Assembly: GCF_001194135.2 (NCBI RefSeq)
Contig: NC_068982.1
Span: 111,749,475 to 111,803,901 of the forward strand
Direction of reading: 5' to 3'
DNA from: Octopus bimaculoides
Taxonomy: Eukaryota
DNA length: 54,427 nt
Translations under genes and position numbers: made by a program
The notes under the pieces: model-generated
The model's database searches: none
Told to the model about the DNA's origin: nothing
Seen by the model: only the letters and a program-made list of their open reading frames with translations
Shown: positions 1,270 to 51,561 of the stretch, one piece after another
How positions within the stretch are numbered: position 1 is the first letter of the stretch
How the letters are laid out: every line of letters starts with the position of its first letter

Positions 1270-2492
1270 AGTTCTTTTTTAGTCTAAAATATACTCTCCT
1301 TCATTTTCTGCAATACTCCTTCTATCTGGAATACTTGCAAGACCCTTCTTCCAAACTTCACTTGTCCATGATGTCCGTGATGAAAAATACTTCTCCAGTA
1401 CTGTTTTGACCTCGTCTACATAATTCATATTTTTTCCGTCTAAATGATTTTGACGACTGCGGAGTAAATGATAATCAGATGGGGCAATGTCCGCAGATTA
1501 TGGTGGGTGGGGCATCGTTTCCCATTCAAACTGCTCCAGCCTTTGAAATGTCATCCTCGCTGAATGTGGCCGAGCATTATTCTGATGGAAGAATACTTTT
1601 CGTCTTGAAACCAAAGATGGTTGTTTTTCTTCTAGCGCTTACTTAAACCGCTCAAGCTGCTCGCAGTAGATCTCCTTTGTTATCGTTTGGTTTGGGCTTA
1701 AAAGTTGAAAGTGGACTAAACCTTTCATATCCCACCAAACAGATAATACCTTACGTGGGTGAAGACCTTCTTTAGCCTTGGATCTTTAGCCGGTATTTCT
1801 CCTTTCCTACCCACTGTCTTCGGCGCTTGACATTTCTATAGAGAACCCATTTCTCGTCAGCAGTCACTATGCTGTTCAAAAAAGGTTCATTCGTGAGACG
1901 TGACAGCAAAGAAGAGCACACATTCACTATTTGCGCACGATTGGTCTCGGAAAGTTTGTAAAGAACCCACTGACCCAATTTGCTGACTTTTGCGATGGCA
2001 CGCAGGTGTCGATGAATGGTTGAATGACCAAATCCAAGCTTCTTTGCTAGTTCCTCAACAGTTACGATTGGATTTTGCTCCACCAGGTTTTGCAGGACGT
2101 TCTCGTCGAGCTCTATAGGTCTGCCAGGAAGAGGATCGTCTTCTAGGTTGTGGTTTCGGCTCGGAATTTCTGGAACTACTGTTAACACTGGCTTACGCTT
2201 ATTGTCCGATCTCCATATACTACATTAATATTTCCTTGCACTTTCCGTTGCGTTGTTGCCTTTATTGAACTCATAAAGCAAAATATACCGAATATGCTCC
2301 TTTGTATTATAGTTTTGAAAAAGTAACTGTTAAAATCGAACAGCACTCTTCAAAACTTGCACTACGAATAAGGACAAGGTAAAATTACTATCTGCTTTTA
2401 TAGCAAGTTGATGCAGGTAGTTTATCCCGTCCCTCTCCGACTTTTAGTTCATGCAATTGAAAAAAACCCGCATTATTTATGGGATGACCCAA
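1270..2492 (-). mobile_element. Decayed mariner (DD34D-type) transposon
   Basis: Frameshifted transposase: KEHIRYILLYEFNKG, EDDPLPGRP, WVLYKL (WVPHEL-like), TADEKW, HQNNARPH, PHPP*SADIAPSDYHL. 5' TIR TTGGGTCATCCCATAAATAATGCGG starts at 2492 next to TA; 3' TIR not seen. Confidence 0.93.
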
Positions 2493-34970: not shown

Positions 34971-35862
34971 CACACGCGCAATATGTATATATGAATGTGT
35001 GTGCATTTGTATGAGTTTATTTGGGAGTGAGACAGTTGAAACCAAATCTTAAACTAAGACAAAGAAAAAACTAGTCTTAATTCAATTATGAAATTAACTT
35101 CAAAATTGTCATTAAGACATCCTGTAAGATTGCTAATAATGTTGTTGTTTGTTGTAGCAGCAGCAGCAATACTAGTAGTAGTAGCAGTAGTAATAGTAAG
35201 AATAGTTGTTGTATGTATGGTGCTGGTATGTAATAGTGGTAGTGGTAGTAATAGTAGTAGTAGTTTGCATTATTTATAATTTCCCTACATTGCCCCATTA
35301 TAGATTGAGTCAGAAACATGTAAGAAAACATGATCTTTCTGTTGTGACTTCTCTTCAACACTTATATGTTTGGTCTTGTACTATTTGTGCAATTGGTGTT
35401 CTTATAGTGTATTATGCTGACCGTCATTACAGATAGGAAGTTTCTCTTTAAGACCTAATGTTCTATCAATGTATGTGTATGTTCATGTTTGTTTATGTCT
35501 CAGTCACAGTGTTAATCTGATATTACTAACCGTATATAATGATTATTTTTCATATCTTTTACTGTTCATTTGATGCCTATTAACTTCCTTTCCATTTCAC
35601 TTGCCTATTGTATATTCTCTTTCTCTAGACCTTAACATTCTTGTCCTGAGTAACCAACCAAATATTTGGCAGAATTTTTACTTGATGATATTTTTATTAC
35701 AAGAATAATATTCTACGTTTATGGTTTAATCAATCCAGTGAAGCAAATCAACTCTAGATTTTTTTCCTAATCTGTTTTGTTATGTATGTATTAAGAGGAG
35801 AAAAATGTTTACGTAGCTTCAGTTGCCAGTATCTTTATGGAATGAAGACTCACCCAGCCTTA

Positions 35863-35974: not shown

Positions 35975-36194
35975 TTGGTATAGTTTTTTTGGGCTGTCCG
36001 CAGCTAGTTGTGTTGCCTTGGCAATACCCCAGCCGAATTTCGTTTGACTCGCGACATATCTGTTGTTGTCGCTGTCCTTTGAGTGCCCTTCCTGATAAAA
36101 GGACACCGTGTTCGGCCTCCACGGGCCATAGCAGGCGTAACAAACGTGAGTGTTGTTTGAGTTGAAGAAATTTGATAAGGTGCCTGACGGCTAG
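35970..36194 (-). CDS. Candidate stop-codon readthrough extension of the innexin (74 aa after the TGA)
   Basis: TGA at 36197-36195 followed by CTAG; frame stays open: LAVRHLIKFLQLKQHSRLLRLLWPVEAEHGVLLSGRALKGQRQQQICRESNEIRLGYCQGNTTSCGQPKKTIPK*, TAA at 35972-35970. Confidence 0.4.
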   Translation of the reverse strand, partial: LAVRHLIKFLQLKQHSRLLRLLWPVEAEHGVLLSGRALKGQRQQQICRESNEIRLGYCQGNTTSCGQPKKTIPK

Positions 36195-37398
36195 TCAGAC
36201 GTTACTGTTGTCGTCGCTAATGGGGTTGGCGTGCCGAAAAAGTGGCTTGTTCCGGTAATGGTTCCACAGTTGAAGAACAAGCTCGGATACCAGCACGTCA
36301 TTGGCGTTTTTGCCTACAAGTCTCAAAACAAATATCCCATCATGCCTTAAGTATTGATCCGCGAATTTCACCGCCATTTTTTTATCCAGTTCTGTCTTGT
36401 AACATTCGTTCACTCTCAGGAACTTTTTCAGATATCTAATACGGTGTTGGCGGAATACCATTGCATAAAACCATATCAGAAAATTGCCGGCACTAAAGGT
36501 TGAAACAAACACTAACCAGAACCAAATGAAAATAAAAATCTTCTCATTGAATAGGTTGATGGGTAGCACACACTGTACAGTGTATTTATGAACATTTTGC
36601 ATCTGGCGAATTTCAAAGTCACACATCGTCACACGTGGGAATCTAGGAGACTCCGTCCAGTCATCTCCATTGGCTAAGTGACTCAGGACTTCAAATCCGT
36701 ACAGATTATAGTTTGTGCCTAAAAATTCATTCAAAATGAAAAGCTGGCCTACAGCATTTCCCATGTAAAAAATCTTGATAACCATGTAGATAATAAAGAG
36801 GTAATTTCCATAGCGTTTCCCCCACACAATGCAACAGTATTTCGATAGAGTCTGGCGCATTCGTATGAGGCAGCCCGATCGATATTCCCTGGCGTTTTCA
36901 AGCCAGCGGTCCATATATCGGACTATATGTTTGATAGTTCTCTCTCGATCTTCAGGAGCCACAAATTGGGTGTCGGCTGCTAACGTAACAATCTTATCCA
37001 GGTTTACGCCTCCGGAAGCACCAAGGATCCTCCACAATATACAAGGAACTTTAAATAACAAGGCTTGGAAGAGAAGGATCATGGGAACCCATTGATAATA
37101 TCCGATCTCCTTTTGCTGTTTTCCCTCCCGGTGCAAAGGTATTCGCTCCTCAAAAGGAACGTAGTACGTGTTTGATATCCAACACACGTTATTGGCATAA
37201 TCCCTGTGTCCGGAAGTAAACTGTGCAGGACACCAGCAGTGAATCGGTTCCCCAACATACTGCTTGGTGCTCACAACAATTGTGAAAATAATAAATATTA
37301 TTGTCGTGTAAAGGTGATTTAACCGGTCGATCCAGTCATCGTCGTAGCGCCCTTTCAAGCGAGCATAAGTTGCAAAACTTCCCAACACACTGTCCAGC
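36195..37398 (-). CDS. inx: Innexin (invertebrate gap-junction protein, unc-9/unc-7-like), main coding exon
   Basis: Open frame of about 400 codons with innexin hallmarks: DDDWIDRLNHLYT, QYVGEPIHCWCP, CWISNTY, YYQWVP, FPRVTMCDF, CVLPINLFNEKIF and four hydrophobic segments. The exon starts after a polypyrimidine tract plus AG (AG at 37400-37399) as G|CTG GAC AGT GTG = phase 2, x-L-D-S-V-L-G-S-F. The ORF-track start at 37388 is a GTG, not an ATG. Confidence 0.97.
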
Positions 37399-37963
37399 CT
37401 GAAAAAGAAAAAAAAAAAGATATTAAATTTCTATCTCTTACTGGATTTCCACATATATTACACAATTTAAAAGATATTGAATTACATTTCATTTTACATA
37501 ATAATTTTATCCAAAATATCACTATCTTTTAAAATAAAATTGATACATTAAAGATGTAGACTTATTTCTTCATTACAATTATTGTTCGTAAAAAATCACA
37601 TGCAAGCACATTTAAACAAAATACGTACATAATATCAGTTGAGAAATATATACATAAATATATTAATCAAAATATACAGTATTAGAGATCCATTACAGGC
37701 GATCAGTTTCGCACCAGATATTAAATAACTGAACAGGTATGTATCTAATACACGTCCTCTTCAGAGGCGGCAAGTATGGAAAAAATCCCACGACTCTTGT
37801 AGTATTTGATAACCGCTCGGTTATCCAATAACCCGTGCGAAATCGATTGGTAAGCTCGGCTGTAATGAATCTATAATACTATACACTTTGACTAATATAC
37901 CAACTCACTTGCCAAATATAAGAGTGCCAGAGTGCCTATATTGTCTGATTTATGGATTCTTAG

Positions 37964-38001
<38 letters not shown>

Positions 38002-38244
38002 CACGTGTCTATTAAACAGAATGTAATGGGTATGTATGATATTGAAATTATATTAGGATTAGCATTAAATTCCATTAAAATTTTAACAGAACAACAAATT
38101 CAGATGACGAAATTTTTTGAATATATAGAGATTGAAAGCAAATTTGGGAAGGCGAACTCAGCGAGTCTTTGCTCGTTTCTACCATAAAAATACATTCAGG
38201 TTCACTCTCACAATATCTACTCAGACTCAAGTACTCATACTCAC

Positions 38245-38279
38245 GATTTCCATATGTGTAAGTCTAAATATGCCAACAT
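38245..38279 (-). CDS. Candidate innexin first coding exon A (MLAYLDLHIWK-S)
   Basis: ATG at 38279, 35 nt (phase 2), donor ATC|GTGAGT; splicing to 37398 gives MLAYLDLHIWKSLDSVLGSF over an 846-nt intron. Confidence 0.45.
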
Positions 38280-38455
38280 TCATTCATGCACGAGTGGATC
38301 TGATGGTATGTATTCATGACATGTTAACAAATATTTAAAACAATAATTTGAATTATGCAATAGAAGTAGCTCTAGAGTCAAACTTTATCTATATGACATA
38401 TTTAATGTATTTGTGGCGTTGAAGAGTCAGAAGCTAGAGTATTCGTGCGAGAGAA

Positions 38456-38598
38456 AAATCTCTTTATAGGCATAGTTAATAAAGCAAAATATTCTTCAGA
38501 GTTAGTCGAAACGAAATCGTCGAAAAAAAAAAAATCTCTTTATAGACATTGTTAAGACAACAAAATATTCTTCAGAGCTAGTCAAAACGAAACCGTCC
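38456..38598. repeat. About 70-bp imperfect direct repeat
   Basis: aaaatctctttatagg...aaaatattcttcagagttagtcgaaacgaaatcgtc and aaaatctctttataga...aaaatattcttcagagctagtcaaaacgaaaccgtc. Confidence 0.9.
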
Positions 38599-38680
38599 AG
38601 GAAGTGATTGCAAGAACGACAGATGTGCACTTCGCCATTTTTAAGGTTTGTCAATATCACGTTGTCGCGTCACTGAAGGT
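38595..38680 (-). promoter_or_regulatory. Possible proximal innexin promoter
   Basis: CpG-rich patch with a YY1-like AAAATGGCG (minus, 38641-38633) and an ETS-like CAGGAAGTG (38598-38606), about 350 nt upstream of candidate exon A. Confidence 0.3.
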
Positions 38681-39988
38681 TAGATTAATTTATATGCATG
38701 GATTTTGTGAAGGATGGTGTAGACAAAATAATATGGTTTATTTGAGAAGATGGAGTTTTTCTTAAAATATCTAGAAATATAGTAAGGTGTAAAACAAATA
38801 AAAATGTCTGCTATTAAAAGTATTTCGTTATCGGTGTATATTAAAAGGTTTATAAATTTCATGTTTGAATGAAGAGAATTTTCTCGACTGTCTTTTTTCT
38901 TGGCAAAAGAATTTCGTTATTTCTGCAGTGCACGAGTTATGCTAATATAACTTATACGCCACATAAGTTATATAGCTTTTCTTATATTTCCATTTTATGA
39001 CTTAGGTCTCGAGATGATAATCCATTTTATATAATATTACTGATTTTCGTTTTTCAGCTTCTAAATGCAGATAATGAGGTGAATTTACATCTATTCGTAT
39101 TTCTGAATGTAAGCAGGTGTTGGGTACGCACACACGTTATATATATATATATATATATATNNNNNNNNNNNNNNNNNNNNNNNNNNNNNNNNNNNNNNNN
39201 NNNNNNNNNNNNNNNNNNNNNNNNNNNNNNNNNNNNNNNNNNNNNNNNNNNNNNNNNNNNNNNNNNNNNNNNNNNNNNNNNNNNNNNNNNNNNNNNNNNN
39301 NNNNNNNNNNNNNNNNNNNNNNNNNNNNNNNNNNNNNNNNNNNNNNNNNNNNNNNNNNNNNNNNNNNNNNNNNNNNNNNNNNNNNNNNNNNNNNNNNNNN
39401 NNNNNNNNNNNNNNNNNNNNNNNNNNNNNNNNNNNNNNNNNNNNNNNNNNNNNNNNNNNNNNNNNNNNNNNNNNNNNNNNNNNNNNNNNNNNNNNNNNNN
39501 NNNNNNNNNNNNNNNNNNNNNNNNNNNNNNNNNNNNNNNNNNNNNNNNNTATTGACATATAATTATAGATAGATACCACAAACACTATAAGTATTGATTA
39601 GGTCTGGTTTTGGCATCTTTTGTTTATGAAAGTGGTTTTAAGAATCACACGCTTTCTCACCGAACCAATACATGGTCTTTGATTCGCGACTACTAAGAAT
39701 TCATTGTCTTATAAAATGGCAAGTAAAGGAGGTTGAGAAAGATGAAGAGGAGGAGAAGAATGATGAAATGGAAAAAAAAAAAAAATTAAAAAAGGACAGA
39801 CCAAAAGAGAGTAGAAAAAATATAAGAAGAAAAGAATTCAGTAATAATTTTGATCAATTCTTTATTTTTGTACATCTGCTACAGAAAACTGTTTTCGGAA
39901 CTAAATTTGAAATACAATCAGACTCAATTTACTATCAATTGGAATAATTGTGTCGTGTTTAAATCGCTTAGAATATATAGTTTAGCAT

Positions 39989-40067
<79 letters not shown>

Positions 40068-40099
40068 TACATAATACAAAGATACATACATACATACAT

Positions 40100-40131
<32 letters not shown>

Positions 40132-40862
40132 TATGATTTTATAGGTAGTCATCAGGAGATCATTTTAAATAAGAAATTTGATAAGAATAAACTAGAATTT
40201 AAAGAAACCGAATCACTCTTCTCTATTTAGATATCTGATTTCATTCACCTTTTATTCTTTACTTTTGTTTTCATCATCTTTCCCTTCTTTGCTTTCAATT
40301 GATAATTTTGTTATATGTATCCGATATTATAAGCTTTTTTTTTCTCTCATCATCTCGCTTTCTTTTAATTGATCAGTTTCTTCTAGTTGCTTTCAATCAC
40401 GTTTTCACATTCCCCCCACCCGCTTTTTTTTTCTAGTCACATAATTACATTAGCAAAACCAGACAAAAAACAATAAGTATATAAAACAACAACAACAACA
40501 CTAACAACAATAATAAACATTTATACAATGACAAAAAACAATTAGAAAACAAAATTGGGAGGACAAAAAGAAGTTGCAAAATACTACTGTCCTATTGATT
40601 CACAAATTCGATAGAACATTTGGAACACTTAAAACCCAGACTATAAAATGTAACAACAACAATTTTTAAAGGCTGCTGTGTCGTTGTTGTTGTTGTTGTT
40701 GTTGCTACTGTTGTTTTATTGCTGAGGTTGTTGCTGTTGAAGTTGTTGTTGAGATTCTTCTTGTTGAGAGTTGGCCAACTCTTTTTAGGTTTGACCAAAG
40801 ACATAGAAATAGGCGATCAGCAAATCTTTCGATCGATATTTTAGACGTCGCTGTCCTGTCAC

Positions 40863-40888
40863 CTTTCTGCGGTTTTGGATTCTGTCAT
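40863..40888 (-). CDS. Candidate innexin first coding exon B (MTESKTAE-R)
   Basis: GCA-ATG at 40888, 26 nt (phase 2), donor AAG|GTGACA; gives MTESKTAERLDSVLG. Confidence 0.25.
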
Positions 40889-41089
40889 TGCTTAGCTCCA
40901 GATCAGGAGTGATTTTTACAATCATTGGTGCCATCCTTGATCGAATCATACATGGCCGTTACAATCACATTTTCCTGTAATTATTGTTATTGTTAGTGTT
41001 TAGCTCCAGGCTTGGTTTGATCCTGCTCTCAAAGACGTTTCAGCCACGACGAAACCATCTTTTATTATCGCCTCTAGCGAAAGCACATC

Positions 41090-41620
41090 CTTACGATAAC
41101 TTCGATCACATCCCGAATTCAGGGACCAGAAAACATTTCAGCCTTTAGTAGGTGCTGACACTTTACAAGGGTCAAATAAGGCTTACAGTGGAGTACTGCT
41201 TCTGCATTTGGGATGGTTCTATTACTACACACATCCTGAATCGCATCCAGTTAGTGATTGAAAGCAGTTAATCGAGTACACGAAGAGTTACTCGACTAAC
41301 TGGTTTCAATCCCCAATAGACACACTCCAGCTTCTGACCCACTCTTTTCTATCATGGTTATAATGGTCTCTATTCATCGTAGCTAACTAGTTTCGTACTC
41401 ATAACTTTCAGGCACTTTAATCTAACTCGTCTTTCCAGATTTTCTCATTCTTGATGTGTCCAACCCCGCCCAACTTCGCCTTAACCATTATGCCAAGTCC
41501 CTTCACCATAGAACACTAGCCCTCTAGAATCTTCTCCCTGTTCATGTCTTTTCTACAAGTGTCGACAGGCAACTGTTCAAACGGGATATTAATTCATCAA
41601 GTCTCCCAGTCACGGGCAGC
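41090..41620 (+). mobile_element. Decayed L2/CR1-type LINE, RT C-terminal portion
   Basis: LYKGQIRLTVEYCFCIWDG...LNRIQ from 41161, TLFYHGYNGLYSS*L, HYAKSLHHRTLAL*NLLPVHVF...QLFKRDIN. Confidence 0.85.
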
Positions 41621-41930
41621 CAAAAATAATGGACAATGTCTCTTTCTTCAGACTCAACGTTTAAAAACTAAGCATACACAAATAATCGGATGTTAGACAT
41701 CAGGAAAAACTTTGCAGCACAGCTCATGCCAGAAAGGAAAACCATCAAGATGAGAGAACATTTATGCAAACGCTATAAATTGAAGTCATGTCCTCCTGTC
41801 TTAAAAAGACAAAAACAAATAAAGACAGCAATCTAGACAATTTTGTCCGGGACCACTGATGATAAAGTTTATAATGACAGCAGTAACAAACCGCGTGTTT
41901 TAAGGTAGACTACGATATATACTTTGAGTA

Positions 41931-42080
41931 GGAGGCGCAATGGCCTAGTGGCTTTCATCCTTTCGGGGTCGATAAATTAAGTACCAGTTATGCACTGGGG
42001 TCAATGGAATCGATTTAATCCTTTTGTCTGTCCTTGTTTTCCCCCTCTATGTTTAGCCCCTTGTGGGCAATAAAAAAAAA
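41931..42080 (+). mobile_element. Internally deleted SINE (family 2-related)
   Basis: ggaggcgcaatggcctagtgg head fused to ctttcatcctttcggggtcgataaattaagtaccagt (shared with 52591-52815); A-rich tail. Confidence 0.75.
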
Positions 42081-42273
42081 AAAATAAAATAAAATAAGTA
42101 GCACTAAAAGAAAACCACTACTAAAGAAATTTTAATTCCCATACGTCACTGCCCTTGATACACTATACCAGAAAAAAACAGACGGGTTGTTCACGGATAG
42201 AATACCTTTCATCAAAAGGACGACAAAGACTACAACGACGACGACGACGACAACCGTCGCCGCCGCTACCACC

Positions 42274-42305
<32 letters not shown>

Positions 42306-42689
42306 CAGCAACAACAACAACAACAACAACAATAACGACTGGAGCTGTAGTAAAAAGAACATGCAATCGATATTTTCAGCATTTATTGGAATCAATAGAG
42401 TAAATAGAGAGATAAAAAGACTGATTGAATAAATAACCTTTTTTTATGAATAAAAATAAGAACAATGAATAATATAATAACCGAGTTTTGGCAGGGTTGA
42501 AGACAAGTTTACAATGATAAACCTCAAAGTCGTTGCTCAACCAGTCGAGGGGGTACGTAAATGTGTTAATAGCGAGACAGAGACCGACATCCCAGGTTAA
42601 ACCGGATTTAAGATGGTTATAACACACACACACACACACACACACATTCATACACACACGCGCGCGCACGCATGCCACCACTAGCTAAC

Positions 42690-42780
42690 GGAAGAGACCT
42701 CTATGTTGTTGCTAGCCCTTGTAGAAATATCGTGCTCCGATATGGCCGCAGTCGAATGATTGAAACAAGTAAAAGAGTGT
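42690..42780 (+). mobile_element. SINE family 1 3' fragment
   Basis: gtgctccgatatggccgcagtcgaatgattgaaacaagtaaaaga matches the tails at 1201-1255 and 53625-53670. Confidence 0.7.
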
Positions 42781-42864
42781 ATGTATGTAAGTATGTATGT
42801 ATATGAAATGTGAGTGAGTTTGTGTACATGTGTACTATGCGTGAATAAAAGACAAAATTCTCAC

Positions 42865-42884
42865 GACCAGAAGTTATCTGCCAT
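42865..42884 (-). CDS. Candidate innexin first coding exon C (MADNFW-S)
   Basis: GAT-ATG-G at 42884, 20 nt (phase 2), donor GTC|GTGAGA, GC-rich upstream sequence; gives MADNFWSLDSVLG. Confidence 0.35.
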
Positions 42885-43755
42885 ATCATGGCTGATCTGG
42901 AGCCGATCTGGCCGAGATGACAACAATAACGTTGTTTACTTAATTTCTGTATCTGCAATATTTTTTCTGCTGTAATCAATATTTTTTATTTCGATTTTTA
43001 AATGCAGCTTGTTAATGCTGTACTCTCCAATCTTTACACGTTTCTCTAAAAATTCATTCATTTAAAAAAAAATGTAGTCGATGAATGATTATCAATGATA
43101 TATATATATATATATATATATATAACTATTGCGATAGTAATGTATATTTCTAGAGTATGTGTAAAACAATTTTTCTATTGCATGATTGAAGATATCAATG
43201 ATCCTATTTCTCATAATTAGTGTAACACCAAATGAAATATCATAATCAGTTAATCATTTAATTAGCCATTGTCTAATGTTAACAGTAGAAAATAAGGAAG
43301 AAAAAAAAAATCAGAAAGAATTCTCCCCAAAATTTCTTTTATTTTTTTACCCTCGCATTTAATATTAGCTCCTCTTTGCTTAAATGTAGACAAATGACAA
43401 TGTTAGCTATCTTAACTGCATATATTCTCCACAAGAGTCATGCTACGACTTGGAAACATGGCTTCAAAGTAAAGAAAGCTTGATTTAAAAATCAGATATT
43501 CATAATTTATTTATCCGTTGCCCATGTTTATAATTGCCCAGTGAAAAGTCTTTATTTTATATACTATGCTGTCATAATTAGTCGCCTATATAATTAATAT
43601 GTAAGCTGATTTACTGTACTTAATTGTGTCGGGTGGTAATGTCATATCTAACCGACACGTTCCAAAAAGAAAAGAAAGAGAAAAAATAAAGAGAGAGAAA
43701 GAGAGAGAGAGAAAGAGAGAGAGAGAAAGAGAAGGAAAGAGTGATATGTATATAC

Positions 43756-43788
<33 letters not shown>

Positions 43789-44509
43789 TAGAGAGAGAGA
43801 GAGTAAAAAAACAACACAGACAAAAACGTAATAAATACAATAAAATATGCCAGCAAAGAACACCTACACTGATGTTTATAGAAACTTTAACTATCAGCGC
43901 CTATATAACTGTCAGAATATATGCTTCGAAAAGAAGGAGAAAATGGGGGATAAAAGGAAAGGGTGAAGAGCCAGTCTTCTCATTCATTAAAATATGGGTC
44001 GAAAGGTACTTGCATGCATGTGTNNNNNNNNNNNNNNNNNNNNNNNNNNNNNNNNNNNNNNNNNNNNNNNNNNNNNNNNNNNNNNNNNNNNNNNNNNNNN
44101 NNNNNNNNNNNNNNNNNNNNNNNNNNNNNNNNNNNNNNNNNNNNNNNNNNNNNNNNNNNNNNNNNNNNNNNNNNNNNNNNNNNNNNNNNNNNNNNNNNNN
44201 NNNNNNNNNNNNNNNNNNNNNNNNNNNNNNNNNTATATATACATATATATATATCAAGATAAAAAGTTATTCGGCATTCAAGATCACGCTTAGAGTTAAC
44301 GATATACGTCACCACATCGCATAAATATGCAGAATCACAAGGAAACAAACATCATAATGCATTTGATAACGCATTATACTACCATTTATAAACTTACATA
44401 AATGTATCATAATATACGCTTATACATACATACAACCACATATATATGTATTTATATCTGCATCTATCTGTCTGCCTGTTTGTCCCCCTGTCTGTCTATC
44501 TATCTATCG

Positions 44510-44570
<61 letters not shown>

Positions 44571-47500
44571 ATATAGGCAAAAATAAGCACAAATGCACAC
44601 ACACATGCGCACACACATTTATTATATTTGCTCATACACATGCACGCATTTTTTATACTGCGAACACATACATATTTATATGCATAGAGGTGTATGAAAG
44701 CGAGTGTGAATAAAAGCCTGAAAGTCTGAAGCATTTATGTTTATATATAGTGATCTAACAAGAAACCATGACTGTGCAAATATAATTACTAAAGCAAGAA
44801 CTTAAAAATACACTGTGATATCAAGAAGAGAAATAATTGATTTCTTTCATTGATACAACTCTATAAAACATTGCAATTTTCTTGAATTCTCTAAAATAGA
44901 TATGCCATCCATTAGAGAGAAAACATCAACAGCACGAGTTTTCCTTTCCAACCTTATTCGAACAGTCCTAAAATCAATGAACTTTTAAATACTAAAGCTT
45001 CAGTAATATATATCGGCTTTATAATTCTTTTTAAAAGATAAGACCGTATGTTTTTCAAGAAAGCAGTAATATAAGATTATGAGTGACATTTGACATTATG
45101 ATCAGTTGGTGAGTGTAAAAACGACACGCTGCCAGAATCTGGCATTATTTACTCAAGTAAAGTAAATCAGTCGCCTTCTCCCCACGAACTCAATCCATCA
45201 TACCCTTTCCTGCAAATGATGTACAGTTAAAGCTTGGTAAAGATTTTCTCTTTGGAATACCACAGAAGAATTTCACTGCATGTGGTATCCTAATAGAAAT
45301 TGTAGTACTTGGGCTTATTATGTGAACTATACTTCCTCGTGGGTACACTCTTCTTCCCTTTATCATGCTGTAGCTACATCTATCATACTATACTTCCGAA
45401 CGTCTTATTGAGTCCCATATCATAGTGTAGCTCCCTATGTCATATAAATTCCCAGGCTGTGTAGCTTTCCATATAGTGCAGTTCATTATATACATCTCGC
45501 CGTGTTACACTGTAGCTCTGCATCGTAGCTCCCTGTGAATCCAGGAAAAAACGTGAGAGTCGTTATTTTTAACACTAAACAGCTCAGTTTTCTAGTTATG
45601 GAATTATATTCAACAACTTGGAGAATAATCTCATTTATAAATTTATACAGTTCGATGTAATAAAGTTATATTCGACTATAATAAAAACATTTTTCTTGAA
45701 CAAATTTAGATTTTAGAATATCTCAAGTCTGACATTATTAATATTATCCAAGCAAGGAAAGCTCTGTTATTTTACACTAATTGTTTTGGGCTAATTGTAT
45801 TGGCCAACCATTGTTTGGCACATGCAATTTTACGATGGGGATGATTATTATGAATTGAGAGGATTGTACCTCTTCTGAAAGAATTCTGTTTTCCTATTTA
45901 CCGTGATGATGAACCGATAGTTTTTGAGTTACGAATGGTCAAGCAAAGAAAGAAGTTCATTTGCATAATCAAAAAGATTTAAAGATCCCAGTAGATATGA
46001 ATTTAGGAAGAGTTAATTTCTTAAATATAATTTTAGATTTAGATACTGGGAAATATCGCTTGCATACTAACTCTAACGAGACATTAAAACCATCCTGCAC
46101 TTATGGCTAAAAACTTAATGAATAATATTAGTGAACGCATATCCAGCTTATTCTTTGATGGAAAATCATTTAACCATGCTGCTTACAAAGGCATTAAAAA
46201 TAGTGGTTTCCAAGCTAGAATACACTATATGTACGAACATTAAAAAAGATAGATGTTGCGAAAATAGGAAATGAAATATTTTATGGTATAAACCTAATTC
46301 AAATGTTCGTTTCAATGATATCGAGATTTTCCTAAACCTTATATATAAACATTTCCATGTTGACCATAGATATAATAAGATATTTAATAGAAATAGACTT
46401 AAAGTGAGTTACGGTATCATCAACAACACTGCCAGCGGAAGAAAACGTGCCGGTATGAAAATTCAAAACTTCTTTCTATGTTATTTCATTTACGCTTTTA
46501 TCTACCCTCTGAAGAGCATGTGTCTTTCTAAAGCATTGGCTCATGGAGTTAAGGTTTGACTTGCATACAAAAAAGTTACACAAGTCTTACTAAAACCACT
46601 CTAAAACTGATTGTCTCATTCTCTGACATTGTGAAAGATATTTTGCATCTCAGTCTCCAAATATACATTTATATACATGCATATATAAATGTATATAAAG
46701 ATGTATGCGTAATTGAGTATAAATATTATGAAAGTCTAAAAATTAAAAAGCATCTGACGATCGTTTCACGGATATTATTTCCTCCACAATGTAATCGATA
46801 TAGATAAGCATACTGGCAATAATTCCGCTCTTCAGAGATGAATACGTGTTAAAAACGAATGGTATATATAAGATGATATTAATTAAAATATTAAAAAATA
46901 TTAAGAATATTAGAAATATTAAAATGTATACTGTCCTTTAAGAGTTTGTAAAAGTAATCCGTCCTATAATTTGGAAATTTCATATTTTTCATTTGTAGAA
47001 ATTTTAANNNNNNNNNNTATATATATATATATATATATGGGAGAATGTACGAAAAAAAACAACAGACGAGGACAAGTGGTGTAAACAACAAAAGGATGTA
47101 TTAGTTTGACGCTCGGGAATATATATATATTTATATGTACATATATATAGAAGTGTGTGTATGTGTGCGCGCATTCATTCATAAGTATTTACTTATATAC
47201 AATTTAGTTTCTTTGTTTCAATAGGAGAAATGAATACAGGGATGAGGAAGTAAGTATACGATTGACAGACACAAGTCATTAACTGTCGTCATTGCCAATT
47301 GTGGTATTGTAGTGTCGCTATTTAGTCAGTTTATCTTCTCGAAGCATACTTTTTCTATTATTTGCTCCACTGACATTTAATAAAATCAGGAATACAATGA
47401 TGTATATTCACTGAAGGCTACTCTTATGTAGCATTAGTTAAAGTAAATATTAAAATAATACTATTTATTTAATACGTAGAATGTGATTTTTATAATCGTG

Positions 47501-48037
47501 TTGAACGCGTCATACTCAAAATGTTTTATTTATTTACTTGCTGTTGGATATCGTTAATTTCTATACTGATGTTCACCTAAAATGGCGTCAAAGTACAATT
47601 TTGATAACGTCAAATCAAGGGTTTATTAAAATGGCGCTAAGCGCAAACATTATGGCAAAGTGCATTTCACCACTCATTCTCTCTGTTTCTCTTTGTTTTT
47701 CTCTCTCTTTCTGCTCCTTCCTCTCTCTCTCTCTCTCAATCTGTCTCTCTGGCTTAAAGTTGACGCCCATCAACAGATTAATTCAATTTCTCAGATGGTT
47801 TAACGAAATCTGTTTTCTCTCATATGAAAGATTAGTTGTTTTGTATTTTTACTTGTTTACACATAATGGCTGTATTGATTAATCACAGATAAATGAATGA
47901 AATGAACATAGGAAAGCACAAAATAAGTTTTTATGAAAACGATGTATTCAGTCCTATGTTAGATATAATAAAACAATAAATTGAACTTTATAGGTCTCCA
48001 AAGTTTTGATTTGTTTTGTGTTTAGAAATGTTTCAGT

Positions 48038-48094
<57 letters not shown>

Positions 48095-48410
48095 NNNNNN
48101 NNNNNNNNNNNNNNNNNNNNNNNNNNNNNNNNNNNNNNNNNNNNNNNNNNNNNNNNNNNNNNNNNNNNNNNNNNNNNNNNNNNNNNNNNNNNNNNNNNNN
48201 NNNNNNNNNNNNNNNNNNNNNNNNNNNNNNNNNNNNNNNNNNNNNNNNNNNNNNNNNNNNNNNNNNNNNNNNNNNNNNNNNNNNNNNNNNNNNNNNNNNN
48301 NNNNNNNNNNNNNNNNNNNNNNNNNNNNNNNNNNNNNNNNNNNNNNNNNNNNNNNNNNNNNNNNNNNNNNNNNNNNNNNNNNNNNNNNNNNNNNNNNNNN
48401 NNNNNNNNNN

Positions 48411-48463
<53 letters not shown>

Positions 48464-49091
48464 CGTATGTATGTATGTGCATGCGTATACGCTTTTCTGT
48501 GTGTATATCTATCTATCTATTTGCATACCATTTTTTGCAAATATAAACGGTACAAAGTGTTTAGGCAATATTTATATAGATTGCATTTGTAGAAACAAAT
48601 ATTATATACAGACTATGTTAGTTTTATTCCGGGAGCTATTACAGAAAAACTCATTAATAGTTTTTAGATCATTAGACTGTATTTTTTAATCGAAAGTTTC
48701 CAGAATTTATAAGAAGCAAGTATATTCATTCTTAGGCTATTGCCGTGTATTAAGAAGTGAATCTTTAGATATTACACATAAAAGGCTTCGGAAAGAAACA
48801 CTTCGCTTAGAAATACTCTACTGAATATTTGCTAAGCACTTTGTACTGTATAGTTTTATTAGAAGGTGGTAAAGAGTTAAATTACTGGAATGTTTAATTT
48901 ACGATAGAATCAGTGACTGTAGGAACTGTAAAACATGAGGATTGTAGCTTTGTAAGGAATGATGATGGATCAATCTCATAAAAGTTCTATAACAATAAAC
49001 AAAACTTAGTTTCCAAATCGTGATTGAAAAAATATGAAATATGATTTTTGTAATTATTCTGCAACAATCGATGCAATAAAAGAAAACATAC

Positions 49092-49225
49092 CCCTTTTTA
49101 GCATCCCCTTCAGGTGAGGGCAATTTTAAATTGAGTTCCTTTAATGACTTCAGTGCCGACAAATTTGGCCATTCTGTCTTTTTCTTTAGAGCACTTTGCT
49201 GCCCGTTTGGTATCAAAGAATTCAT
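49092..49225 (-). CDS. Candidate innexin first coding exon D (44-aa N-terminal extension)
   Basis: ATG at 49225, 134 nt (phase 2), donor AGG|GTATGT; MNSLIPNGQQSALKKKTEWPNLSALKSLKELNLKLPSPEGDAKK-G. The ORF turns intron-like in composition right after the donor. Confidence 0.3.
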
Positions 49226-50795: not shown

Positions 50796-51561
50796 CAGTT
50801 CGTAAATAATCCGTTAATCAATATATTTATACTAATATATAGTTTTTGAGTTACGTTCTGCATCGAACAGCGGGGGGTTACTAAAAAGAAGAAAACAAGC
50901 AACCTTTCTTTTGTCCCAGATTAATGACTTTTTAAACAGGCACGAATTTTTAGTTTTTGATATGATATTGAGTTTATTGAGTTTTGAGAAATCTTGCCAG
51001 TTATGGCAGTTTTCATTATGTTGCATACACGGACACACACGCACTCCTCTCTGTTTCTGCTTCTCTCCGTTTCAGCCTCTCTGTGTTTCAGCCTCTCTCT
51101 CTCTGTCACCTCACCAAACAGATACTAGCTACAAACGATATTTTCTCCTTATAAAATCCAACAATCTAAAAGTTCTTTCTTCCGTGCCCTAAATTTTTCC
51201 TTGCAAGCTTTGATTTATGTTTAAGTTTGATACCAATCGCATCAATGCTACCATCTGGAAGATTCTGCAAAAGCTATGAGTGCTGTCTGATCTCCAGTCA
51301 CTAACTGTTAAAGAACACTTGCAGTACAAACAAACATGAATCTATTCAGTATATTATATGCGAAGAGATCCAACGCAACTTAGTTGCATACTCCGAGTTT
51401 TTGTGCTGGAAGTGGTATTCAGATAAAGTAGCTACTTCATAAATGCCCAAGATATCTATATTGAGTACATTAACACGAGAGTAAGTTCAATAAAAAGTAC
51501 TCTTTACGAAAAGACGCTCAAGAACCTCAGAAAAGGGTGATACATTTAAGTTTTATTGTGT

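What the first reader, a model, noticed from the sequence alone, without database searches (positions are those of the whole stretch)
38245..49225. Array of alternative phase-2 first exons that could give one innexin several N-termini
Seen: the main exon has no ATG before residue ~100 and begins at a phase-2 acceptor, so an upstream coding exon is obligatory. Four separate ATG mini-exons end in a phase-2 GT donor and splice in frame: A 38279-38245 (MLAYLDLHIWKS-), B 40888-40863 (MTESKTAER-), C 42884-42865 (MADNFWS-), D 49225-49092 (44 aa + G-). A and C both end TC|GTGAG with a nearby Trp. Known: innexin N-termini line the pore and affect voltage gating and rectification, and Drosophila shakB and C. 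elegans unc-7 use alternative N-termini. Inference: a variable-first-exon/constant-exon layout could diversify electrical synapses by cell type. Caveat: in about 13 kb of AT-rich DNA some candidates will arise by chance.
Basis: partly seen in the sequence, partly recalled or inferred. Interest (0 to 1): 0.7.

Follow-up and report, generated by a model that had tools for sequence, protein, structure and literature searches.

The report
Octopus innexin: one real alternative first exon

Summary
The sequence is as described. A 400-codon innexin exon (minus strand, 37398-36195) starts at a phase-2 acceptor. Its first Met is residue 106, so an upstream coding exon is required. All four mini-exons exist at the stated coordinates and none touches an assembly gap.

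Only D (49225-49092) has support. D plus the constant exon is letter-for-letter XP_014767857.1, "innexin unc-9 isoform X3 [Octopus bimaculoides]". A D-like exon is spliced to the same acceptor in transcripts of another octopod.

A, B and C joined to the constant exon are absent from a 15-billion-protein collection. They match none of the 11 distinct N-termini retrieved for this gene in octopods. They are not conserved in a related genomic contig. Their number is what chance gives: 12 ATG-to-good-donor strings observed against 9.4 +/- 3.6 in shuffles.

The general idea is right but already annotated. The retrieved isoforms differ only before LDSVLGSF. The O. bimaculoides gene model spans about 368 kb, so most first exons lie outside this window. 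Gastropod and bivalve orthologues have the same layout, and one N-terminus (MMHSLTR) is identical in octopus and abalone. The variable exons appear to extend the channel's N-terminal helix rather than replace it, as in C. elegans UNC-7 isoforms.

The parts
36195..37398 (-). Constant coding exon of the innexin gene. It has 400 codons (LDSVLGSF...DDNSNV) plus the stop codon. The first base, G at 37398, completes a split codon.
   Evidence: Translation. Pfam Innexin at E=4e-105. 100% identical to the constant part of every retrieved isoform in the octopod innexin unc-9 cluster. 182 nucleotide differences and 0 amino-acid differences against transcript L001 of another octopod.
37399..37425 (-). 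3' splice site: AG at 37400-37399 preceded by a T-rich polypyrimidine tract. All first exons splice to this shared acceptor.
   Evidence: Sequence. Transcripts L001-L006 of other octopods, with two different first exons, switch to constant-exon sequence at the homologous position.
49092..49225 (-). Candidate D: a genuine alternative first coding exon (MNSLIPNGQQSALKKKTEWPNLSALKSLKELNLKLPSPEGDAKK plus GG of a split Gly codon). The donor GT is at 49091-49090.
   Evidence: D plus the constant exon is an exact match to XP_014767857.1, innexin unc-9 isoform X3 [O. bimaculoides]. 95.6% identical to the O. sinensis/O. vulgaris N-terminus. A D-like exon (32 of 47 aligned positions identical; 79% nucleotide identity, E=1e-13) is spliced to the constant exon in transcripts L001-L003.
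37399..49091 (-). Intron between exon D and the constant exon, about 11.7 kb. It contains four assembly gaps of estimated length that sit next to simple repeats.
   Evidence: No conservation with the 6.2 kb upstream of the constant exon in related genomic contig L008, apart from microsatellites.
38245..38279 (-). Candidate A (MLAYLDLHIWKS): present in the sequence but unsupported; most likely a chance ATG...GT string.
   Evidence: A plus the constant exon is not in the 15-billion-protein collection. Donor score 2.05, within the shuffle background. An out-of-frame ATG 4 nt upstream stays open to the same donor. No counterpart in L008.
40863..40888 (-). Candidate B (MTESKTAER): present in the sequence but unsupported; most likely chance.
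   Evidence: Not in the collection. Donor score 2.8, within background. Three upstream out-of-frame ATGs stay open to the donor. No counterpart in L008.
42865..42884 (-). Candidate C (MADNFWS): present in the sequence but unsupported; most likely chance.
   Evidence: Not in the collection. Donor score 0.47, one of 36 strings at or above 0 against 24 +/- 5.6 expected. An out-of-frame ATG 5 nt upstream stays open to the donor. No counterpart in L008.
36036..36194 (-). Start of the 3' UTR, conserved with the transcripts of other octopods.
   Evidence: The blastn alignments of L001-L005 and L008 run about 160 nt past the stop codon, to 36036-36037, at about 83% overall identity.

Best explanation
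The window covers the 3' end of the Octopus bimaculoides gene annotated as 'innexin unc-9'. The whole channel is encoded by one constant exon (37398-36195, minus strand). That includes the N-terminal helix, the four transmembrane segments and the C-terminus. The start codon and a variable N-terminal extension of 1 to 47 residues come from one of many alternative first coding exons. Each ends after the second base of a codon and splices to the single acceptor at 37400-37399.

Exon D (49225-49092) is the only such exon that could be identified in this window, and it gives isoform X3. The others lie further upstream, within a gene model of about 368 kb. Candidates A, B and C are chance ATG...GT strings in AT-rich intron DNA.

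Shown here: the exon structure, the identity of D, the multiplicity of N-termini in public models, their conservation, and two different first exons with unrelated 5' leaders in real transcripts of related octopods.

Inferred: each first exon has its own promoter, so different cell types make the same channel core with different cytoplasmic N-terminal extensions. By analogy with C. elegans UNC-7b, such extensions could tune voltage gating, rectification, partner choice or trafficking of electrical synapses.
For: Structure and phase:
- Shown: Exon D:
- D plus the constant exon equals XP_014767857.1 exactly.
- It is 95.6% identical to the O. sinensis/O. vulgaris N-terminus.
- A D-like exon is joined to the same acceptor in Logan transcripts L001-L003.

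The array:
- 11 distinct octopod N-termini were retrieved, all joined at |LDSVLGSF. They begin MEKKR.., MVTQA.., MNSLI.. (D), MATHF.., MHVYF.., MFSWA.., MKRRL.., or are MFIDLIINEG, MMHSLTR, MK, MR and bare M (a split ATG).
- The MFIDLIINEG form is also seen in transcripts L004-L006, whose 5' leaders share nothing with those of L001-L003.
- The gene range is 367.8 kb in O. bimaculoides and 133.6 kb in O. vulgaris.

Only D in the window:
- tblastn and peptide scans find only D.

A, B and C:
- They are absent from the collection.
- They are at chance frequency.
- They are not conserved in L008.

Selection:
- The constant exon has 182 nucleotide changes and 0 amino-acid changes against L001.
- D has 32 of 47 aligned positions identical.
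- MMHSLTR is identical in Octopus and Haliotis, and the same layout is seen in Biomphalaria, Pomacea, Crassostrea, Ostrea, Mytilus and others.

Extension, not replacement:
- Constant-exon residue 17 aligns with INX-6 residue 21.

Functional precedent:
- UNC-7 has 10 isoforms that differ mainly in the N-terminus, and the UNC-7b N-terminus confers rectification (PMC7455501).
Against: - Most of the N-termini are computational RefSeq (Gnomon) or ENA gene models. I could check real transcripts only for two of them, and only in species other than O. bimaculoides.
- No RNA-seq junction data for this species were available, so rare use of A, B or C is not excluded.
- The conservation test against L008 is weak for 20-35-nt exons. 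L008 covers only 6.2 kb upstream, in a species whose introns are otherwise unalignable.
- 14 of the 31 cluster members were not displayed. The exact look-up does exclude full-length A, B or C forms of this species.
- Separate promoters and any effect on channel properties are inferred, not shown.
Confidence: 0.85

Rival explanations
1. One or more of A, B and C are genuine but unannotated first coding exons, for example used at low level or in a few cell types. The window would then carry a local cluster of two to four alternative first exons.
For: - All three have an ATG, an open frame and a GT donor in the correct phase.
- Short N-termini of 2-7 residues are typical of real isoforms of this gene: MMHSLTR, MK, MR; and MIESLW, MFGWG, MYW in other molluscs. 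Several of these end in or next to Trp, as A and C do.
- Gnomon models are not exhaustive.
- 14 cluster members were not displayed.
Against: - The exact look-up of A, B and C joined to the constant exon found nothing, while the D form and the bare-M form were found.
- The counts of such strings equal the shuffle expectation, and an unlisted string scores better.
- Each has at least one out-of-frame ATG a few bases upstream that stays open to the donor.
- No similarity to any retrieved N-terminus of this orthogroup.
- Nothing is conserved at these sites in L008. Real first exons are conserved together with their leaders: D at E=1e-13, and the MFIDL leader at 87% over 164 nt between species.
Confidence: 0.08
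2. The many N-termini are mostly annotation or transcriptional noise. The functional protein is the canonical short form, M|LDSV..., with the ATG split by the intron. Upstream exons, D included, would matter only as 5' leaders.
For: - The 401-aa form M+LDSV... exists in the collection. It is also modelled in oysters and scallops, and in Babylonia for a paralogous gene.
- Its N-terminal length is that of a typical innexin.
- D's ATG is preceded by an out-of-frame ATG 13 nt upstream, which would compete for initiation.
Against: - Individual N-terminal peptides are conserved as proteins over long distances. MMHSLTR is identical in Octopus and Haliotis. The 47-aa MEKKR... peptide is identical in O. 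bimaculoides and Argonauta. D has 32 of 47 aligned positions identical, with an uninterrupted LNLKLPSPEGD block. Long His-rich and PKPK-containing forms are shared among gastropods.
- In all these forms the reading frame and the phase-2 junction are kept.
Confidence: 0.05

Closest known systems
RefSeq models of this very gene: 'innexin unc-9' isoforms of Octopus bimaculoides (X1-X9 seen here; X3 = XP_014767857.1) and the corresponding O. sinensis, O. vulgaris and Argonauta hians models
   Same: The constant exon is identical, and D plus the constant exon is an exact match. The isoforms differ only in the residues before LDSVLGSF.
   Different: These are computational annotations, and I found no paper in the searchable library that describes or tests the array.
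[quoted passage not shown]
   Same: One innexin core carries N-terminal extensions of very different length, 24-168 aa before TM1 in UNC-7. The short form has a canonical N-terminus and the longer forms add cytoplasmic sequence in front of it. NCBI names the octopus protein 'unc-9'.
   Different: Some UNC-7 isoforms also differ in the intracellular loop, whereas the octopus isoforms retrieved differ only at the N-terminus. No electrophysiology exists for the octopus forms. Orthology between the nematode and mollusc genes was not tested.
Drosophila shaking-B (ShakB N, N+16, Lethal)
   Same: Alternative 5' exons give innexin isoforms used on different sides of rectifying electrical synapses (as summarised in PMC7455501).
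   Different: The differences between ShakB(L) and ShakB(N+16) extend through TM1 up to TM2. In the octopus gene TM1 and the N-terminal helix are constant.
Orthologous innexin genes of gastropods and bivalves (Haliotis X1-X9, Biomphalaria X1-X11, Pomacea X1-X7, Crassostrea, Ostrea, Mytilus)
   Same: Same junction (|LDSVLGSFATYA), the same mix of very short and long N-termini, and some shared peptides such as MMHSLTR. The constant part is 78-84% identical to octopus.
   Different: Most long N-termini are lineage-specific. Examples are the His-rich forms in gastropods and bivalves. The D-type peptide was seen only in octopods.
Clustered variable-first-exon loci (clustered protocadherins, UGT1A)
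   Same: Many alternative first coding exons upstream of shared constant coding sequence, with one chosen per transcript.
   Different: The octopus variable exons are short, do not encode a folded domain, and show no significant similarity to one another. They are therefore not a tandem-duplicated paralogous array. Stochastic promoter choice is untested.

Membership tests
Innexin (Pfam PF00876) | Full-length match to the innexin profile above the curated cut-off | tested here: met
   352 bits against a cut-off of 25, profile positions 1-333 of 333. INX-6 (PDB 5h1q) at E=1.6e-51.
Octopus bimaculoides 'innexin unc-9' gene, isoform X3 | The conceptual splice of exon D to the constant exon gives the deposited protein sequence | tested here: met
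   Exact-sequence look-up returned XP_014767857.1 / A0A0L8I0B4_OCTBM.
Innexin genes with alternative N-terminal first exons (unc-7 / shakB type) | Several products share the channel-coding sequence and differ only in the 5' coding exon | tested here: met
   11 distinct octopod N-termini joined at one point. Two of them are seen in assembled transcripts of related species.
Innexin genes with alternative N-terminal first exons (unc-7 / shakB type) | The alternative exons are first exons with their own leaders or promoters, not internal cassettes behind a shared leader | tested here: inconclusive
   The 5' leaders of L001-L003 (262-293 nt) and L004-L006 (137-440 nt) share no similarity, which fits separate starts. 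These are other species, however, and transcription start sites were not mapped.
Innexin genes with alternative N-terminal first exons (unc-7 / shakB type) | Isoforms differ in gating, rectification or cell-type expression | not testable with these tools
   This needs expression data and electrophysiology. The precedent is PMC7455501 only.
   The exact look-ups of A, B and C joined to the constant exon were negative, while the D form and the bare-M form were positive. They match none of the retrieved N-termini.
   12 observed against 9.4 +/- 3.6 at score 2 or more, and 36 against 24 +/- 5.6 at score 0 or more.
   No counterpart in the 6.2 kb upstream of the constant exon in L008. The exons are short, the species is distant (83% coding identity) and the coverage is limited. 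The O. sinensis and O. vulgaris DNA could not be fetched because the gene range is too long.
Clustered variable-first-exon loci (protocadherin / UGT1A type) | The variable exons are paralogues of one another | tested here: not met
   All-against-all blastp of the N-termini gave no hit below E=0.5.

The most novel reading that the evidence does not exclude
The most conserved molluscan innexin carries an ancient set of a dozen or so alternative N-terminal 'address or gating tags'. The constant exon shows zero amino-acid changes among the octopods sampled here and is 84% identical between octopus and abalone. Some tags, such as MMHSLTR, have not changed since cephalopods and gastropods diverged. 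Each tag would be driven by its own promoter across hundreds of kilobases, giving a cell-type code for electrical-synapse properties in molluscan, including cephalopod, nervous systems. This appears not to have been described in the literature I could search, although the isoforms sit in RefSeq. A further, less likely, part of this reading is that one of A, B or C is an additional, unannotated member.
Probability: 0.3. Interest if true: 0.6.

Novelty: already known. Interest (0 to 1): 0.3.

Why it matters
For this finding, the practical result is a correction. Only one of the four proposed exons is real, and it is already annotated. The true array is about 30 times larger than the region flagged.

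The wider point could interest people who study electrical synapses. The channel core is under extreme constraint. It is combined with many conserved N-terminal extensions, in animals with large nervous systems and classic rectifying giant-fibre synapses. This is a ready-made system for testing whether N-terminal extensions set rectification and partner specificity, as shown for UNC-7b in C. elegans. That would require expression mapping and electrophysiology, and nothing here demonstrates function.

Tried and rejected
- Scans for other retrieved N-termini. I ran tblastn and six-frame peptide scans of the window for every N-terminus long enough to search for. Only D was found. The one- and two-residue forms (M, MK, MR) cannot be located by sequence alone. 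The only strings with a good donor were AT|GTAAGT at 44399 and ATGAA|GTAG at 51440, and both are unverifiable.
- Scan for N-terminal endings known from other molluscs. I checked every phase-2 GT site for such endings (..SLW..HHLSE..GEG and so on). The one near-hit (47068..LHHLSS) has no Met, has upstream stops and has a poor donor. I rejected it.
- Genomic DNA of close relatives. I tried to fetch O. bimaculoides, O. vulgaris and O. sinensis chromosome DNA for a direct conservation test.
- Second protein search. I searched with the first 150 residues to catch transcript fragments with other N-termini. It returned only genomic read-through ORFs (P0137, P0139) and no new N-terminus.
- Repeat check. 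A, B, C and D are not part of repeats within the window, so a transposon origin is neither supported nor needed.
- Pfam on the D peptide found no family.
- Literature. Searches for a description of the octopus or molluscan array found none. Limax 'innexin 9x1-9x4' cDNA variants (PMC8049302) may be the slug counterpart, but I could not check orthology.
- The bacterial promoter/terminator scanner was not used because it does not apply to an animal gene.
Full report
**1. The observation**

On the minus strand a long T-rich tract ends in AG at 37400-37399. From 37398 an open frame reads LDSVLGSFATYARLKGRYDDDW... for 400 codons, to a stop at 36197-36195. The G at 37398 is the third base of a codon, so the preceding intron is phase 2. 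An in-frame stop lies just upstream of the acceptor. The first Met of the exon is residue 106. The product is a full-length innexin: Pfam PF00876 at 352 bits and INX-6 at E=1.6e-51.

The four mini-exons are at the stated coordinates with the stated peptides and phase-2 GT donors.

**2. The assembly gaps**

The four gaps in the finding's range lie between D and the constant exon. Simple repeats abut at least one side of each: (TA)n at three of them, and (CT)n plus (TA)n at 48095-48410. No candidate exon or reading frame crosses a gap. The gaps affect only the stated intron length of about 11.7 kb. The order and orientation of D and the constant exon are consistent with a deposited protein that is matched exactly.

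**3. What the gene is**

A search with the constant exon found a 90%-identity cluster of 31 proteins whose constant part is 100% identical to the window. The named members are 'innexin unc-9' isoforms of Octopus bimaculoides (X1-X9), O. sinensis (up to X12), O. vulgaris and Argonauta hians.

D joined to the constant exon is letter-for-letter XP_014767857.1, isoform X3 of O. bimaculoides. The window is therefore from that species, and D is an annotated exon.

**4. The array is real but is mostly elsewhere**

All retrieved octopod isoforms differ only before LDSVLGSF. I retrieved 11 distinct N-termini:
- MEKKR...(47 aa)
- MVTQA...(46)
- MNSLI...(45; this is D)
- MATHF...(44)
- MHVYF...(36)
- MFSWA...(21)
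- MKRRL...(16)
- MFIDLIINEG
- MMHSLTR
- MK and MR
- a bare M, whose ATG is split by the intron

tblastn and peptide scans find only D in this window. The O. bimaculoides gene model for the longest isoform spans 367.8 kb, and the O. vulgaris model spans 133.6 kb. The window's 17 kb upstream of the acceptor is thus only the proximal end of the locus.

**5. Transcript evidence**

Logan assemblies of RNA runs from other octopods have 83-84% nucleotide identity to the window in the constant exon and no amino-acid change (182 differences, 169 of them at third codon positions). They give two transcript types:
- L001-L003 carry a D-like exon (MTHQPIRNGQKKK...LNLKLPSPEGDGVSKG).
- L004-L006 carry MFIDLIINEG.

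Both types switch to constant-exon sequence at the same position. Their 5' leaders (137-440 nt) share no similarity between the two types. That is what alternative first exons with separate starts predict, though start sites were not mapped.

D itself aligns to the D-like exon at 79% nucleotide identity (E=1e-13), with 32 of 47 aligned residues identical. Nothing else in the intron aligns.

**6. Candidates A, B and C**

*Public data.* A, B and C each joined to the constant exon are not in the 15-billion-sequence collection. In the same call the D form and the bare-M form were found. The constant exon is invariant among octopods, so any full-length model or assembled ORF of these forms from this species would have matched.

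*Chance.* The 17 kb upstream of the acceptor holds 531 ATG-to-phase-2-GT strings. With a donor weight matrix (frequencies recalled from metazoan consensus, so approximate) the counts against 200 dinucleotide shuffles are:

| Donor score | Observed | Shuffles |
|---|---|---|
| at least 2 | 12 | 9.4 +/- 3.6 |
| at least 0 | 36 | 24 +/- 5.6 |

A scores 2.05, B 2.8 and C 0.47, all inside this background.

*Context.* Each of A, B and C has an out-of-frame ATG a few bases upstream that stays open to the donor.

*Conservation.* L008 is a 12.4-kb genomic contig of a further related species with 6.2 kb upstream of its constant exon. It has no counterpart of A, B or C by tblastn or sensitive blastn; only microsatellites match. 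This last test is weak for such short exons.

*Similarity to known forms.* None of the three resembles any retrieved N-terminus of the orthogroup.

I conclude that A, B and C are most likely chance strings. I leave about 8% that at least one is real.

**7. How it most likely works**

The constant exon encodes the whole channel subunit. Its residue 17 aligns with INX-6 residue 21. By offset, its first residue corresponds to about residue 5 of INX-6. The N-terminal region that forms the pore funnel in innexin structures (established knowledge; not re-derived here) is therefore constant. The first exons supply the Met and an extension of 0-46 further residues in front of it.

The best-supported mechanism is choice of first exon, probably by alternative promoters, giving cell-type-specific cytoplasmic extensions on an invariant core.

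The functional precedent is C. elegans UNC-7. It has 10 isoforms that differ mainly in N-terminal length (24-168 aa before TM1). Only UNC-7b forms strongly rectifying junctions with UNC-9, through charged residues in its N-terminus (PMC7455501). D is Lys-rich (ALKKKTEW...KSLKELNLKL...DAKKG), so a comparable electrostatic role can be tested. It is not shown.

**8. Comparison with what is known**

The same layout is annotated across Mollusca:
- Haliotis X1-X9
- Biomphalaria X1-X11
- Pomacea X1-X7
- Crassostrea, Ostrea, Mytilus and others

All are joined at |LDSVLGSFATYA. MMHSLTR is identical in Octopus and Haliotis, which argues that at least some extensions are functional peptides rather than noise.

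Unlike protocadherin or UGT1A clusters, the variable exons are not paralogues of one another. Unlike ShakB(L) versus ShakB(N+16), TM1 is not exchanged.

I found no paper in the searchable library that describes the octopus or molluscan array. Limax 'innexin 9x1-9x4' may be related, but I did not verify this.

**9. Verdict**

What is verifiable is already in public annotation. Interest is modest. The under-described pan-molluscan conservation of N-terminal variants is the part that might repay follow-up.

Noticed in passing
window 49238-49223 (minus strand); L001 about 278-296: An out-of-frame ATG lies exactly 13 nt upstream of D's start codon. It is conserved between the window (ATGGAAAGGCCGAATGA) and the D-like transcripts of another octopod (ATGGAAAGACCTCATGA). 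In the window it opens a 42-codon upstream ORF that overlaps the D start. This could be a translational control element.
   Followed up: partly
window 36195-37398 (minus strand) compared with L001, L004, L006: The constant exon is under extreme purifying selection. There are 182-185 nucleotide differences (169-173 at third codon positions, none at second) and no amino-acid change over 400 codons between octopod species. It is 84% identical in amino acids to Haliotis.
   Followed up: yes
proteins P0124, P0172, P0183, P0207, P0185: The 7-residue N-terminus MMHSLTR is identical in Octopus and Haliotis. It is nearly identical in Pomacea (MTMMHSLTR) and Gigantopelta (MLHSLTR). A tiny alternative first exon has apparently been kept since cephalopods and gastropods split.
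   Followed up: partly
L007 9680-10420 (ENA ERZ26168041, contig at 3.3x coverage, unidentified mollusc): Four tandem copies, with a period of about 140-195 nt, of the splice acceptor plus the first 95 nt or so of the constant exon (LDSLLGSFATYARLKGRYDDDWIDRLNHLYTT). Only the last copy continues into the rest of the exon. That exon is here interrupted by an intron after CWCPAEF, and the remainder lies about 4.3 kb downstream. It could be a real micro-duplication or a low-coverage assembly artefact.
   Followed up: partly
window 1772-2188 (minus strand): A 138-aa ORF (…PLPGRPIELDENVLQNLVEQNPIVTVEELAKKLGFGHSTIHRHL…ADEKWVLYRNVKRRRQW…). From memory it looks like the N-terminal DNA-binding part of a mariner/Tc1-type transposase. 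Pfam gave only weak helix-turn-helix hits below the curated cut-offs. It is probably a transposon remnant downstream of the innexin gene.
   Followed up: partly
window 35172-35265 and 36036-36194 (minus strand): Sequence after the stop codon stays alignable with transcripts and a genomic contig of other octopods, about 160 nt directly after the stop. A further 73%-identical 100-nt patch lies about 0.9 kb downstream. This suggests conserved 3' UTR elements.
   Followed up: no
Its product joined to the constant exon is also absent from the protein collection. This shows how easily such strings arise.
   Followed up: yes
whole window: The window has sixteen assembly gaps. The four in the finding's range sit beside (TA)n or (CT)n repeats, and ORF translations across most of the other gaps show similar simple-repeat flanks. 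Overall G+C is 13-39% per 2 kb. This is typical of a draft short-read scaffold of a repeat-rich cephalopod genome.
   Followed up: partly
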